Shown: positions 21,176 through 26,555 of the stretch, piece by piece | Layout: each line of letters opens with the position of its first letter | Position numbering within the stretch: the first letter of the stretch is position 1 | Source of the DNA: Guillardia theta CCMP2712 | Lineage: Eukaryota; Protista; Cryptophyta | Assembly (NCBI RefSeq): GCF_000315625.1 | Contig: NW_005434554.1 | Coordinates: 61,297 to 125,241 of the forward strand | Direction of reading: 5' to 3' | DNA: 63,945 nt | Notes under the pieces: model-generated | What the model was told of the DNA's origin: nothing | Databases searched by the model: none | Seen by the model: only the letters and a program-made list of their open reading frames with translations | Translations under genes and position numbers: made by a program

Positions 21176-23509
21176 ATGCGGCTAGTGAAGATGCTGATCG
21201 CATTGGTGATGCTCACGATGGCGAGGGGAGGAGGAGGAGGAGGAGGAGGAGGAGGAGGAGAGGAAGTAAGGGGAGAGGAAGGAGGATATGACGCAGGGGA
21301 GGGTAGGAGAAGGACAGGGATGTGTTTGAGAAAACTGATAGAGTGGGGTGAAGGATCGAGAAAAGGCAGGGCCATGGACGTCATGGTAGACGTCGAACGG
21401 CAGGAAGTATGGGTGGTGGGCCCTCTACATCCCCTCTGGATCGTGACAGATGCAGGAGAAGGAGCCAGAGGAGGCGAGTCTTGGCCGATCGTGTGGGGGG
21501 AAGGGAGGGATCTTTCATGGATTCCTCGGGAAAAGAACGCTGCTAGCCAATGTATCTTCACCAGAGGGCAGGATGATCCGAAGCTTGAAGCGAGGATTCA
21601 GTCCATGAAGTCAGGAAAGGCGATAGGAAAGCAAGAGGAAAAAGAGAAGGAGGATGAGGATCGAACGTTTGTTGTCTTTCGAGCTGATCCCTTCGGGCAT
21701 ATCAATCTCCTTTCCTGCCTCCTCCCTCCTTGGGTGATGCCGATGCTCATGGCCAAGGAAGAAGTGAGGCTGCACCTGCTTCTTGTCCCTCGTCCTGCCT
21801 TCCATGCTCTGACCTGCAACGCCTCTGCCGGCAGCGATCGCGACTTCTGTGGGACATGTGAGAGGATGGTCGAGGAAGGAGGTTGGGGGGCAGCAGGGCA
21901 GTGCGTGGACTATGAGACGATGATGACTGGAGCCGTTGCTGTGAGCCACCTGCCCCTGTGCCTTCCAGACGAACTGCCCAGGGTAACCTTGTCTCTCTGC
22001 TGCATGATCAGAGATGAAGCGCTGTACCTGCGGGAGTGGATAGAGTACAGCAGGATGATGGGGGTTGAAAGATTCTTGCTGTACGACCATGGCAGCATCG
22101 ACACGACGCGCATGGTGCTTGCACGGTACGTGGAAGAGGGGATCGTTGTTCTGCATGACTGGAACTTCACTGGATATCCCCAGAAGGAAGCGCACACTCA
22201 CTGCACCAGGCGCTACGCACACCAGACCGACTGGCTGGGGCTCTTAGACGTTGACGAGTTCTTGCTCCCCAGGAGGAGCGACAGCATGCTCGACCTTCTT
22301 CGATCTACCTCTGTGTTCGGGGCAGAGAACGTCGTGTTCCGCCTCAAGGCTGCGATGTTCGGGACCTCGAAGCACAGGAAGAGGCCCAGGGGGCTGGTTG
22401 TGGATGAGTACCTGATGAGAAGCCGCGGGAGAAACTCAGATCAGAGCAAAGTTCTCTTCCTTCCCCGCTTCATCGTCATGCCGGGGATCCACGAGGTGCT
22501 GCTCGCTCGCTCTGTCAGCCTTGTGGTGGATGTACACCCCCACGACTTTCGGTACAACCACTACAGGAGCAAGTCCCTGGAGGACCATGCGCAGGATCCG
22601 CTGAGGAGGGATATGGCGATCGAAGAAGCGAACGAGGAAGTAGACGTCGAGCTTCCCCTCCGTTTCTCCCACCTCCTTCACGACAGACTCTGTCCTCCTG
22701 AAGCATCTGAGAGCATTCGAGCAGAGGAAAACCAGGGGAACAGGAGCCAAGATGTTTGCATGCAAATGGGGCTGTTCTACGAGCAGCATTGGAACTCTAC
22801 ATCGAACCTTGAAGCGAGGAGAAGCTTAGCCGCAGGAGAAGCAGCGCTGGTAGGTGCTACGTTGCTCCGCAAGTCGATGGAGCTAGAGGAGCAATGTCCT
22901 GCGTTCGTCGCTGCCATGGCAGAGCTCCTCGACCGGGGAAAGGTTGTGATGGACTGGGGCTGTGGGAGTGGCTTTATGGCAGAAGAACTTCAGAGGATAG
23001 GCTACCACGTCCGATGTGTCGACACTGAAGGGCTTGCTTCCTCTCTTCTTCCCCTGTTGCACACTGTGGCTCCCGATCAAGCATCGCAGGGAGGAAGATC
23101 AGGAGCAGGAGCAGGAGCAGGAGCAGGAGCAGGAGCAGGAGCAGGAGCAGGAGCAGGAGCAGGAGCAGGAGCAGGAGCAGGAGCAGGAGCAGGAGCAGGA
23201 GCAGGAGCAGGAGCTGAAGGGAACGAAACGATGAGAAATTCGAGGGGGGCAGAGCAACTGATATCCTTCCTGGGAGCAGAGGGGGCTCTCTCCTACGAGC
23301 AGGAGGAAAAGATCTTAGATGATATCTGCGCGCAGAGGCCTAGCACTCTTGTGCTTGGATGGCGTCGAAAATGCTCGCCCTTCCTCTATGGAGCGAAAGT
23401 GCTGTGCAGGGATGACGGCGGGAAGGAACATGAGTTAGACGGGACGTTCACTCCAGATGAGGAGGTGGAGAGGAAGCTGATGGGCTGTTGGAGGAGATCG
23501 ACGACCTGA
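21176..23509 (+). CDS. Secreted GT92/GT2-like glycosyltransferase fused to a class I SAM methyltransferase-like domain
   Basis: Signal MRLVKMLIALVMLTMARG. GT motif LSLCCMIRDEALYLREWIEYSRMMGVERFLLYDHGS..WLGLLDVDEFL..NHYRSKS. SAM motif VMDWGCGSG. The ORF is open from 20987. Confidence 0.82.
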   Translation: MRLVKMLIALVMLTMARGGGGGGGGGGGEEVRGEEGGYDAGEGRRRTGMCLRKLIEWGEGSRKGRAMDVMVDVERQEVWVVGPLHPLWIVTDAGEGARGGESWPIVWGEGRDLSWIPREKNAASQCIFTRGQDDPKLEARIQSMKSGKAIGKQEEKEKEDEDRTFVVFRADPFGHINLLSCLLPPWVMPMLMAKEEVRLHLLLVPRPAFHALTCNASAGSDRDFCGTCERMVEEGGWGAAGQCVDYETMMTGAVAVSHLPLCLPDELPRVTLSLCCMIRDEALYLREWIEYSRMMGVERFLLYDHGSIDTTRMVLARYVEEGIVVLHDWNFTGYPQKEAHTHCTRRYAHQTDWLGLLDVDEFLLPRRSDSMLDLLRSTSVFGAENVVFRLKAAMFGTSKHRKRPRGLVVDEYLMRSRGRNSDQSKVLFLPRFIVMPGIHEVLLARSVSLVVDVHPHDFRYNHYRSKSLEDHAQDPLRRDMAIEEANEEVDVELPLRFSHLLHDRLCPPEASESIRAEENQGNRSQDVCMQMGLFYEQHWNSTSNLEARRSLAAGEAALVGATLLRKSMELEEQCPAFVAAMAELLDRGKVVMDWGCGSGFMAEELQRIGYHVRCVDTEGLASSLLPLLHTVAPDQASQGGRSGAGAGAGAGAGAGAGAGAGAGAGAGAGAGAGAGAGAGAEGNETMRNSRGAEQLISFLGAEGALSYEQEEKILDDICAQRPSTLVLGWRRKCSPFLYGAKVLCRDDGGKEHELDGTFTPDEEVERKLMGCWRRSTT

Positions 23510-26500: not shown

Positions 26501-26555
26501 TGACGGAGGGAATTATACTTACGGGGGACATCGGGGGTGGTATGGATGGCAATGA
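23461..26555 (+). mobile_element. Ty1/copia-derived Gag-protease-integrase gene lacking RT/RNase H and LTRs (probably domesticated; predicted intron 25337-25383)
   Basis: Gag-like LRIQLLSL..EDHFLRVINRMKLLLTQLK. Copia protease-like FLADLRSNFSM..TVQTAAG..GTLTINL..LKEVWV..LPMVSVESL. Pre-integrase LWHCRLGH..CNTC. rve core FLLTVVDVFSGY..RLIYDRSNEL. Tail TPHLLY..LMVFGC..GVFLG..ATFDE. Confidence 0.82.

What the first reader, a model, noticed from the sequence alone, without database searches (positions are those of the whole stretch)
23461..26555. Intron-containing, RT-less, LTR-less copia Gag-PR-IN: candidate domesticated retrotransposon gene
Seen: Gag-like, protease-like, HHCC (LWHCRLGH..CNTC, upstream of the tracked ORF start) and integrase segments occur in Ty1/copia order over ~3 kb with no premature stops. 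The two frames are joined by a 47-nt GT-AG intron with a branch-like GCTCAC and a pyrimidine tract (25337-25383, GTACCA...CTCTCAG), giving EVMP-L-DAVDGV. The gene ends with an acidic stretch, an RQRKRR NLS-like motif and a G/Y/W tail, and is followed directly by a convergent host gene. I see no RT, RNase H, LTR or PBS. Known: active copia elements pass through RNA and need RT and LTRs. Inference: an intron plus intact but strongly diverged ORFs means long-term retention as a host gene, analogous to Arc, PEG10 or GIN1, but from copia and in an alga.
Basis: partly seen in the sequence, partly recalled or inferred. Interest (0 to 1): 0.85.

Follow-up and report, generated by a model that had tools for sequence, protein, structure and literature searches.

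The report
Immobilised copia Gag-protease-integrase gene, cryptophyte
A cryptophyte alga carries one retrotransposon-derived reading frame (capsid-like, protease-like and integrase parts) that lacks reverse transcriptase, terminal repeats and intact enzyme active sites, yet stays open far longer than neutral decay allows, so it is probably kept as a host gene; this rests on a single locus with no RNA or comparative data.

Summary
Window 23461-26555 (+) carries two stop-free frames. They are colinear, at 21-27% identity, with the Gag-PR-IN part of an RT-bearing copia family known only from metagenomes. The window has no RT, RNase H, LTR, PBS or second copy.

- The protease motif D-S/T-G is D-L-R.
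- The integrase triad is E-D-E, and only 22 of 36 highly conserved integrase columns survive, while the HHCC finger and the three-domain fold are kept.
- The integrase branch is about four times the median length.
- The first in-frame ATG (23509) overlaps the stop of the upstream GT92/methyltransferase-like ORF.

Simulated neutral drift leaves no stop-free copy beyond about 5% divergence. The active-site loss therefore happened while the frame was under selection.

The 47-nt GT-AG segment equals the modal intron length of Guillardia theta, and intron-like segments of this kind are rare in local coding DNA. A second such segment (23465-23523) would fuse the upstream ORF in frame.

Verdict: domestication is partly supported (about 0.55). 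Copy number, transcription, splicing and orthologues are untested, and no close relative was found in any database.

The parts
23461..25539 (+). ORF1 (frame 1): Gag-position region, low-complexity linker and protease-like domain. In-frame ATGs at 23509, 23530, 23767 and 23770.
   Evidence: Colinear with L002:5581-8322 (E 5e-17), L001 ORF 2-433 (E 2e-11) and P0003. Host-like codon usage, GC3 0.74-0.79.
23491..24354 (+). Gag-position region. Predicted all-helical. No CCHC knuckle seen by eye in the translation.
   Evidence: Homology to the N-terminal ORF of the metagenomic copia family. No Pfam gag hit. hhalign against Retrotran_gag_2 members was negative. The AF2 model is unusable, pLDDT 36.
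24355..24900 (+). G/Q/R/S-rich low-complexity linker between Gag and protease
   Evidence: Translation. Lowest coding score in the gene. The relatives have an RGG-rich linker at the same place.
24901..25336 (+). Retropepsin-like protease domain. The active-site motif is LADLRS (24931-24948): Asp kept at 24937-24939, and S/T-G replaced by L-R.
   Evidence: BLASTP to P0002/P0003. Alignment A2 with seven copia proteases, all D-S/T-G. Coordinates.
25337..25383 (+). Candidate 47-nt GT-AG intron (GTACCA...CTCAC...CTCTCAG) joining frame 1 to frame 0
   Evidence: Length equals the G. theta intron mode (PMC6260743). 9 of 10 pyrimidines before AG and a CTNAY motif with its A 10 nt from the 3' end. No such 47-nt segment in about 23 kb of local coding DNA. 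Chance expectation at this junction about 0.01. No RNA evidence.
25384..26555 (+). Integrase exon: HHCC finger (W29-C65, 25470-25580); catalytic core with E95 (25668-70), D158 (25857-59) and E194 (25965-67); SH3-like C-terminal domain (about 26157-26345); disordered acidic/RQRKRR/G-Y-W tail (26355-26552); stop 26553-26555 inside a (TGA)4 microsatellite
   Evidence: AF2 pLDDT 78.6 and Foldseek hits to retroviral integrases at E 5e-10.
23465..23523 (+). Second intron-like segment (59 nt, GTGGAG...CTGAT...CCCATTCCAG). It spans the upstream ORF's stop (23507-23509) and has the phase that would fuse that ORF to ORF1 (...TFTPDEE|TAMLRCRPGG...).
   Evidence: Chance expectation 0.006. The fused CDS of 1820 codons has no internal stop. 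Unverified.
20987..23509 (+). Upstream ORF: GT92 glycosyltransferase domain plus the N-terminal half of a class I methyltransferase-like domain, interrupted by an in-frame (GCAGGA)n repeat. Its stop overlaps the ATG at 23509 (TGATG).
   Evidence: Pfam Glyco_transf_92 E 7e-27; Methyltransf_23 E 4.5e-4, below the curated cut-off..
26895..27205 (.). Assembly gap (311 N), flanked by microsatellites, between the stop codon and the convergent gene
27374..29735 (-). Convergent multi-exon gene with HhH-GPD glycosylase-like motifs (ILSQNTT..., VDTHVFR). Its introns are 160-280 nt and full of microsatellites. Its 3' end is not resolved.
   Evidence: Read by eye. Pfam on single exons was blank.

Best explanation
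This is the Gag-protease-integrase half of a Ty1/copia retrotransposon that became fixed in a cryptophyte (Guillardia/Hanusia lineage) chromosome. It lost its LTRs, its first 30-40 or so Gag codons and everything from the IN-RT linker onward. It has since been kept as an open reading frame by selection while its enzymatic sites decayed, so it reads as an exapted, non-catalytic host gene.

Shown:
- The domain order and the homology to copia.
- The absence of RT and LTRs.
- D-L-R in place of the protease D-S/T-G motif.
- E-D-E in place of the integrase D-D-E triad.
- Loss of 39% of conserved integrase columns, with the zinc finger, core fold and SH3-like domain retained.
- A very long branch, no stop codons, and host-like codon usage.

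Inferred:
- The two frames are joined in mRNA by a 47-nt intron of the modal cryptomonad size.
- The product is about 990-1000 aa: a capsid-like multimerising part, an RGG-like linker, a dead protease barrel, and a DNA/RNA-binding but non-cutting integrase with an NLS-like tail.
- It acts by binding rather than catalysis. The most likely role is a decoy that co-assembles with or competes against active copia Gag/IN and limits them, as Ty1 p22 and Fv1 do. A chromatin or DNA-tethering role is the alternative.
For: Homology and order.
No RT, no LTR, no other copy in the window.
Protease DLR.
Integrase: HHCC kept, first Asp changed to Glu, 22 of 36 conserved columns kept against 84-100% in 36 other copia integrases.
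Integrase fold retained.
Terminal branch 4.87 against a median of 1.1.
Neutral simulation: 49/400 stop-free replicates at d=0.02, 1/400 at 0.05, 0/400 at 0.1 or more.
Codon usage and GC3 like the host ORFs.
Intron: length equals the G. theta mode (PMC6260743); the signal is rare in local coding DNA; no slippery site for frameshifting.
Against: - No RNA, copy-number or orthologue data.
- The genome itself seems absent from the searchable collections, so paralogues with RT and LTRs cannot be excluded.
- G. theta has 431 RepeatMasker copia hits.
- No homologue above 27% identity anywhere, including the Hanusia phi transcriptome and JGI/IMG-VR contigs.
- 43 alternative GT/GC-AG pairs restore the frame, and a recent 1-nt lesion would look the same.
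- The seven introns I inferred in the neighbouring gene are 160-280 nt.
- Both ends look like arbitrary truncations: the 5' end abuts the upstream ORF with no promoter space, and the stop lies in a microsatellite.
- The long branch joins another long branch, and the sequence composition is atypical.
Confidence: 0.55

Rival explanations
1. It is a dead relic of a copia element, truncated at both ends by deletions and now drifting. The frame change at about 25340-25450 is a 1-nt lesion, not an intron. The open frames only mean that inactivation was recent.
For: - Truncation points look arbitrary: about 30-40 Gag codons are missing, and the ORF ends in a (TGA)n microsatellite inside the IN-RT linker.
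- There is no promoter space.
- One frame break exists, and frame-restoring GT-AG pairs are plentiful.
- Copia fragments are common in G. theta.
- No orthologue was found.
Against: A recent relic of an active element should still have DSG and DDE and about 90% of the conserved integrase columns. It has 61% and DLR. Acquiring those changes neutrally implies at least 0.2 substitutions per site, at which 0/400 simulated copies stay stop-free, with about 18 stops on average. The intron-like signal at the break is rarer than chance.
Confidence: 0.2
2. It is one decayed copy of a multi-copy, RT-less or otherwise non-autonomous copia-derived family, mobilised in trans by autonomous elements. In that case the open frame and the odd active sites were shaped by selection at the level of the transposon, not the host.
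For: Selection for an open frame with relaxed catalysis does not say who benefits. Cryptophyte genomes carry hundreds to tens of thousands of copia copies (PMC12747079). Copy number could not be tested.
Against: This copy has no LTR, PBS or PPT. Non-autonomous LTR elements are not known to keep a 390-codon integrase frame they do not use (own knowledge). An intron that must be spliced to join the frames would be lost from daughter copies. No related sequence turned up in any collection.
Confidence: 0.12
3. It is an assembly artefact. The frame break is a base-calling indel, or the RT/RNase H/LTR part is hidden in or beyond the 311-nt gap.
For: The scaffold has four N gaps, one of them 340 nt after the stop. 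A GGGG run lies at 25440 in the overlap zone.
Against: The ORF ends at a stop codon before the gap. The gap is sized at 311 nt, while RT-RNase H plus an LTR needs more than 2 kb. The convergent gene's exons start right after the gap. No RT remnant exists anywhere in the 64 kb. A sequencing indel would remove the need for the intron but would not change the main conclusion.
Confidence: 0.05

Closest known systems
Ty1/copia (Pseudoviridae) LTR retrotransposons; the nearest are unnamed metagenomic elements P0002/P0003 (JGI contigs Ga0172376_10014977 and Ga0172367_10013583, loci L001 and L002)
   Same: - Gag-position ORF, retropepsin-like protease and copia-type integrase (WHxRLGH...CxxC finger, rve core, SH3-like CTD) in the same order.
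- Colinear homology over about 1000 residues, extending into the acidic IN-RT linker.
   Different: - Only 21-27% identical.
- No RT/RNase H, LTR or PBS.
- Protease DSG changed to DLR; integrase DDE changed to EDE; 14 of 36 conserved integrase columns changed.
- About 30-40 N-terminal Gag codons missing.
- A frame change between protease and integrase that the relatives lack.
Integrase-derived host genes of vertebrates (GIN1, GIN2/CGIN1, NYNRIN)
   Same: A retroelement integrase kept as an immobile, intron-bearing host ORF with altered catalytic residues (own knowledge; PMC3670739 was seen only as a title and abstract).
   Different: Those derive from Ty3/gypsy (Metaviridae) or retroviruses, contain integrase without Gag-PR, and have orthologues across vertebrates. 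This one is copia-derived, keeps Gag-PR-IN together, sits in a cryptophyte, and has no known orthologue.
PEG10/RTL1-type Gag-protease domesticated genes
   Same: A multi-domain Gag-Pol remnant without RT, encoded in two overlapping frames.
   Different: PEG10 keeps an active DSG protease and a -1 slippery site (own knowledge). Here the protease motif is DLR, no slippery heptamer exists, the frames are more likely joined by an intron, and the origin is copia rather than gypsy.
Gag-derived restriction factors (Ty1 p22 copy-number control, Fv1, enJS56A1)
   Same: The proposed way of working: a defective capsid or polyprotein that co-assembles with and poisons related active elements (own knowledge; inference only).
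   Different: No functional data here. Those factors are Gag-only.
SETMAR-type host-transposase fusion genes
   Same: If the 59-nt segment 23465-23523 is spliced, the stop of a host (methyltransferase-like) ORF is removed and a transposon ORF becomes its 3' exons.
   Different: SETMAR joins a SET domain to a mariner DNA transposase (own knowledge). Here it would be GT92 plus a class I methyltransferase-like domain joined to a retrotransposon Gag-PR-IN. Entirely unverified.

Membership tests
Ty1/copia LTR retrotransposon (as a mobile element) | Gag - protease - integrase order with a copia-type integrase (HHCC WHxRLGH finger, rve core, SH3-like CTD) | tested here: met
Ty1/copia LTR retrotransposon (as a mobile element) | Reverse transcriptase (RVT_2) and RNase H downstream of the integrase | tested here: not met
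   tblastn with P0002 and 150 copia polyproteins: no hit outside 25170-26498 in the 64 kb
Ty1/copia LTR retrotransposon (as a mobile element) | Flanking long terminal repeats | tested here: not met
   Only microsatellite families among direct repeats in 15-40 kb. Host ORFs abut both sides.
Ty1/copia LTR retrotransposon (as a mobile element) | Primer-binding site next to a 5' LTR | tested here: not met
   The best match to a tRNA-iMet-type PBS has 3 mismatches in 12 and lies inside the upstream ORF.
Ty1/copia LTR retrotransposon (as a mobile element) | Catalytic protease motif D-S/T-G | tested here: not met
   D-L-R at 24937-24945, against D-S/T-G in all seven aligned copia proteases
Ty1/copia LTR retrotransposon (as a mobile element) | Integrase D,D,35,E triad | tested here: not met
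   E95-D158-E194. The first Asp is present in 97% of 36 copia integrases.
Ty1/copia LTR retrotransposon (as a mobile element) | Multiple related copies in the genome | not testable with these tools
   The genome is not available. None in the window.
Domesticated retroelement-derived host gene (GIN1 / PEG10 / Arc kind) | Loss of the parts needed for mobility | tested here: met
Domesticated retroelement-derived host gene (GIN1 / PEG10 / Arc kind) | Reading frame kept open beyond the neutral expectation | tested here: met
   39% of conserved integrase columns and the protease motif changed, with 0 stops in 999 codons. Simulation gives 0/400 stop-free at d of 0.1 or more. This is an indirect, single-sequence argument.
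Domesticated retroelement-derived host gene (GIN1 / PEG10 / Arc kind) | Orthologues in related species under purifying selection (dN/dS below 1), syntenic | tested here: inconclusive
   No protein above 27% identity in 1.84e9 representatives or the 5.8e9-protein word search, and none in JGI metagenome or IMG/VR contigs. Cryptophyte genome coverage in these collections is thin.
Domesticated retroelement-derived host gene (GIN1 / PEG10 / Arc kind) | Single copy, transcribed and spliced | not testable with these tools
   No genome and no RNA data
Domesticated retroelement-derived host gene (GIN1 / PEG10 / Arc kind) | Spliceosomal intron acquired after immobilisation | tested here: inconclusive
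   The 47-nt segment has the modal G. theta length and rare 3' signals, but 43 alternative pairs exist and there are no junction reads.
Programmed -1 frameshift Gag-Pol expression (PEG10 / retroviral kind) | Slippery X XXY YYZ heptamer in the overlap of the two frames | tested here: not met
   None in 25320-25540
Host-transposon fusion gene (SETMAR kind) | Splicing that removes the host ORF's stop and joins it in frame to the transposon ORF | tested here: inconclusive
   The intron-like 59-nt segment 23465-23523 has the right phase, a chance expectation of 0.006, and gives a fused CDS without stops. No RNA evidence.

The most novel reading that the evidence does not exclude
The copia remnant is not a separate gene but the 3' exons of a host-transposon chimera. 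A 59-nt intron (23465-23523) would remove the stop codon of the upstream GT92/methyltransferase-like ORF, and a 47-nt intron (25337-25383) would join protease to integrase. The result would be a protein of about 1820 residues that couples a glycosyltransferase and methyltransferase-like enzyme to a capsid-like, zinc-finger and integrase-fold nucleic-acid-binding module. This would be a SETMAR-like capture, but of a retrotransposon polyprotein, in a cryptophyte.
Probability: 0.3. Interest if true: 0.8.

Novelty: new variant of a known kind. Interest (0 to 1): 0.55.

Why it matters
As far as I know, described retroelement-derived host genes come almost entirely from Ty3/gypsy elements and retroviruses of animals. 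PMC3670739 (title and abstract only) treats Metaviridae-derived ones, and my literature search turned up no copia-derived Gag-PR-IN gene.

A selectively kept, catalytically dead copia Gag-PR-IN in a cryptophyte would show that Pseudoviridae are also a source of host genes, and in a secondary-plastid alga. It would offer a natural candidate for a self-derived brake on copia activity. If the fusion reading holds, it would be a second route to host-transposon chimeras.

If it turns out to be one of many copies, it is an ordinary relic of a divergent copia family.

Tried and rejected
- Pfam on ORF1/ORF2: only a weak rve hit, and nothing for Gag or protease.
- PDB sequence search with the IN piece: noise.
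- Word-indexed protein search: one weak plant copia fragment for the IN piece and nothing for Gag-PR.
- Profile-profile comparison of the Gag region against Retrotran_gag_2-bearing copia Gags: no relation.
- AF2 of the Gag region with a two-row alignment: pLDDT 36, so I did not use it for a fold search.
- Exact look-up of five host ORFs: not in the collection, so the genome seems held out. I skipped look-ups of unspliced candidate products for that reason. The spliced products have no reference and were not sent to any search tool.
- Two JGI metagenome scans and two IMG/VR scans: no relative except the already known contig.
- -1 ribosomal frameshift: no slippery heptamer.
- DNA-transposon reading (Ginger/Polinton-like): no terminal inverted repeats, and the protease and finger are copia-type.
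- RNA gene: no Rfam hit in 18-32 kb.
- Learning a local short-intron consensus from ORF joins: mostly noise.
- Locating introns in the SERCA-like gene: only a probable in-frame intron of about 160 nt.
- Confirming the methyltransferase C-terminus, to see whether the upstream gene is truncated: no signal.
- LTRs in the relatives' contigs: none, the contigs are too short.

In scripts the frames were joined only at the hypothesised introns, to test those gene models.
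Full report
**Where the window comes from.**
The window is nuclear DNA of a cryptophyte of the Guillardia/Hanusia lineage.
- An intronless pseudouridine-synthase ORF (41896-42963) is 96% identical to an unnamed ENA metagenome protein. 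Among named sequences it is closest to Hanusia phi (71%), then other cryptophytes and algae.
- Five long host ORFs are not in the protein collection by exact look-up, and no Guillardia theta entry appears among the listed hits. The genome itself therefore seems absent from the searchable data.
- GC is 50-64% along the window, and there are four N gaps.

**The observation.**
- Frame 1 is open from 23461 to 25539, and frame 0 from 25326 to 26555.
- Pfam gives only a sub-threshold rve hit (E 0.027).
- A full HMMER scan of 1.84 billion representatives with the frame-0 piece (window:25386-26552) returns 159 proteins; the top hits checked with Pfam are copia-type polyproteins.
- The best are P0002 (1414 aa, E 8e-20, 27% identity) and P0003 (1189 aa), both with rve, SH3_retrovirus and gag_pre-integrs; P0002 also has RVT_2 and a sub-threshold Pol_BBD hit. 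They come from two JGI metagenome contigs (L001, L002).
- ORF1 is colinear with the same family. The N-terminal region matches L001 ORF 2-433 (E 2e-11). Gag-position plus protease match L002:5581-8322 (E 5e-17 and 8e-08).
- 'Gag' is a positional call. Neither this region nor the relatives' matches canonical copia Gag profiles, and the AF2 model of it was too poor to use (pLDDT 36).

**What is missing.**
- tblastn with 150 copia polyproteins, most of them carrying RT, hits only the integrase region. Nothing else in the 64 kb matches.
- Direct repeats around the locus are all microsatellites. There are no terminal inverted repeats, no PBS-like site and no Rfam family.
- The ORF stops in a (TGA)4-(GGA)n microsatellite. 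Alignment with P0002 suggests this lies inside the acidic IN-RT linker.
- A gap sized at 311 nt lies 340 nt downstream, and exons of a convergent gene with HhH-GPD-like motifs begin just beyond it. There is no room for RT-RNase H-LTR unless the gap size is badly wrong.
- At the 5' end, homology to the relatives' Gag starts at about 23491, which corresponds to residue 39 of the L002 Gag. About 30-40 codons, the 5' UTR and the LTR are therefore gone.

1. The protease active site is L-A-D-L-R-S (24931-24948), where all seven aligned copia proteases have D-S/T-G.
2. The integrase keeps H30, H35, C62 and C65, but its triad is E95-D158-E194. The first Asp is present in 97% of 36 copia integrases.
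3. Of 36 columns that are at least 80% conserved in those 36 integrases, the window keeps 22 (61%). Every other sequence keeps 84-100%, with a median of 92%.
   - Several of the losses lie in the conserved motifs that hold the catalytic residues: DLxGP, SDxGxEF, QQNGxAER.
   - The finger, the W/A/N/P framework and the FGC...G motif of the SH3-like domain are kept.
4. With a 37-row alignment, AF2 folds residues 20-330 with confidence (mean pLDDT 78.6). Foldseek matches retroviral integrases at E 5e-10, and the last 58 residues are disordered.
5. In a tree of 37 integrases the window pairs with P0002 (SH-aLRT 88) on a terminal branch of 4.87, against a median of 1.1. This carries the usual long-branch caveat.
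6. Codon usage and GC3 (0.74-0.79) resemble the host ORFs of the window.

**Selection or decay.**
I simulated neutral substitutions on the 999-codon spliced CDS.

| Divergence d (substitutions per site) | Stop-free replicates | Mean stops |
|---|---|---|
| 0.02 | 49/400 | 2.1 |
| 0.05 | 1/400 | 5.3 |
| 0.1 | 0/400 | 9.8 |
| 0.2 | 0/400 | 17.6 |

The locus has no stop and at most one frame break. Any neutral period therefore corresponds to about 2% divergence or less, which changes about 4% of residues. That cannot explain the loss of 39% of the conserved integrase columns together with the protease S and G.

These changes must have accumulated while the frame was under selection but catalysis was not. 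A domesticated gene predicts exactly this. An autonomous element cannot sustain it. A non-autonomous element has no known reason to keep a 390-codon integrase frame (that last point is my own knowledge). It is indirect and rests on one sequence.

**The frame junction.**
- The shift from frame 1 to frame 0 must occur between 25326 and about 25460.
- There is no slippery heptamer.
- 43 GT/GC-AG pairs would restore the frame, so a pair existing there means little by itself.
Goniomonas has a mode of 46 nt (PMC6260743).
- It has 9 of 10 pyrimidines before AG and a CTCAC motif with its A 10 nt from the 3' end. That resembles the CTGAC motifs 9-19 nt upstream of several 3' splice sites I inferred in the neighbouring gene.
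- In about 23 kb of uninterrupted coding sequence from this window, no 47-nt GT...AG segment has these features. Only two segments of 40-60 nt have them together with a length of 2 mod 3. The chance expectation at the junction is about 0.01. The criteria were chosen after seeing the candidate.
- The seven neighbouring introns are 160-280 nt, with weak and varied 5' sites, one of which is GTACAT.
- I put the intron at roughly 0.7. The alternatives are a recent 1-nt lesion or a base-calling error, for example at the GGGG run at 25440.

**The upstream boundary.**
- The first in-frame ATG of ORF1 (23509) overlaps the TGA (23507-23509) of the 840-codon upstream ORF. That ORF has a GT92 domain (E 7e-27) and a sub-threshold methyltransferase N-terminal half.
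- There is therefore no intergenic space for a promoter.
- I applied the intron criteria, fixed beforehand on the first candidate, to the whole locus. They returned one further segment within the locus: 23465-23523 (59 nt, GTGGAG...CTGAT...CCCATTCCAG). Two other returns do not count: an alternative donor (25327) that shares the first candidate's acceptor, and a segment downstream of the stop.
- That segment spans the upstream stop and has exactly the phase that joins the two ORFs (...TFTPDEE|TAMLRCRPGG...). The chance expectation is 0.006, and the resulting 1820-codon CDS has no internal stop.
- This is either a coincidence, a UTR intron, or a sign that the remnant is expressed as the 3' exons of the upstream gene. 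I report it as the most novel reading not excluded (about 0.3). The alternative start at ATG 23530 lies two codons after that acceptor.

**Relatives and copy number.**
- No protein above 27% identity was found in either large collection.
- The JGI metagenome and IMG/VR scans returned nothing new.
- The Hanusia phi transcriptome is in the collection and has no detectable orthologue. That is weak evidence against deep conservation.
- RepeatMasker finds 431 copia fragments in G. theta, 0.34% of the genome (PMC12747079, Table S10). Family membership therefore remains open and could not be tested here.

**Verdict.**

| Reading | Probability |
|---|---|
| Immobilised copia Gag-PR-IN remnant kept open by selection after losing catalysis, probably spliced | about 0.55 |
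| Recent neutral relic | about 0.2 |
| Member of a non-autonomous family | about 0.12 |
| Assembly artefact | about 0.05 |

How it works is inference. The suggested role is a non-catalytic multimerising and nucleic-acid-binding protein, most plausibly a decoy against related copia elements.

It is not a member of the mobile copia family in the functional sense, because five defining features were tested and not met. Membership in the 'domesticated gene' class lacks its decisive tests: copy number, RNA and orthologues.

Noticed in passing
window 23465-23523 and 23507-23511: The upstream ORF's stop and the first ATG of the Gag frame overlap (TGATG). A 59-nt intron-like segment spanning that stop would fuse the two ORFs in frame.
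   Followed up: partly
window 23090-23220: An in-frame (GCAGGA)n repeat, read as poly-(Gly-Ala), splits the methyltransferase-like domain of the upstream ORF. The part after the repeat has no detectable methyltransferase homology, so it may be an in-frame intron or a degenerate domain.
   Followed up: partly
window 27374-29735 (-): A convergent multi-exon gene with HhH-GPD/endonuclease III-like motifs (ILSQNTTSKNS, VDTHVFR). Its seven inferred introns are 160-280 nt and are largely CT/GA-rich microsatellites. Their 5' splice sites are weak: GTGAGC, GTAAGC, GTGCTG, GTAAGT, GTGGCT, GTCGCC, GTACAT. Its last exons were not found and may lie in or beyond the N gap.
   Followed up: partly
window 45335-52645 (+): A single 2436-codon ORF with an LCCL domain and about 25 tandem CHB_HEX_C_1/Fn3_assoc repeats. 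This is unusually long and intronless for a genome reported to average 5.3 introns per gene.
   Followed up: no
window 9666-12872 (+) and 7064-8944 (+): An intronless 1068-aa LRR_8 protein with 19 repeats, next to a U-box plus protein-kinase ORF.
   Followed up: no
window 60719-61693 (+): A SERCA-type P-type ATPase exon with about 54 extra in-frame residues between SERCA positions 219 and 219-245. This is probably an in-frame intron of about 160 nt. The upstream exons were not located.
   Followed up: partly
L002:30-3227 and L002:5581-8322; L001:431-433: The nearest relatives sit as two element copies head to tail on one metagenome contig, with 2.3 kb between them and no repeat of 80 nt or more detected. 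The L001 copy has an in-frame stop between the N-terminal Gag part and the rest, and a break between IN and RT.
   Followed up: no
whole window, e.g. 16580-16830, 26556-26640, 27210-27260, 27740-27990, 28700-28800, 33120-33950: Purine- or pyrimidine-rich trinucleotide and hexanucleotide microsatellites are very dense. They lie in introns, between genes and in frame inside ORFs, and all four assembly gaps (2675-2774, 17062-17257, 26895-27205, 40494-40593) may sit in such tracts.
   Followed up: no
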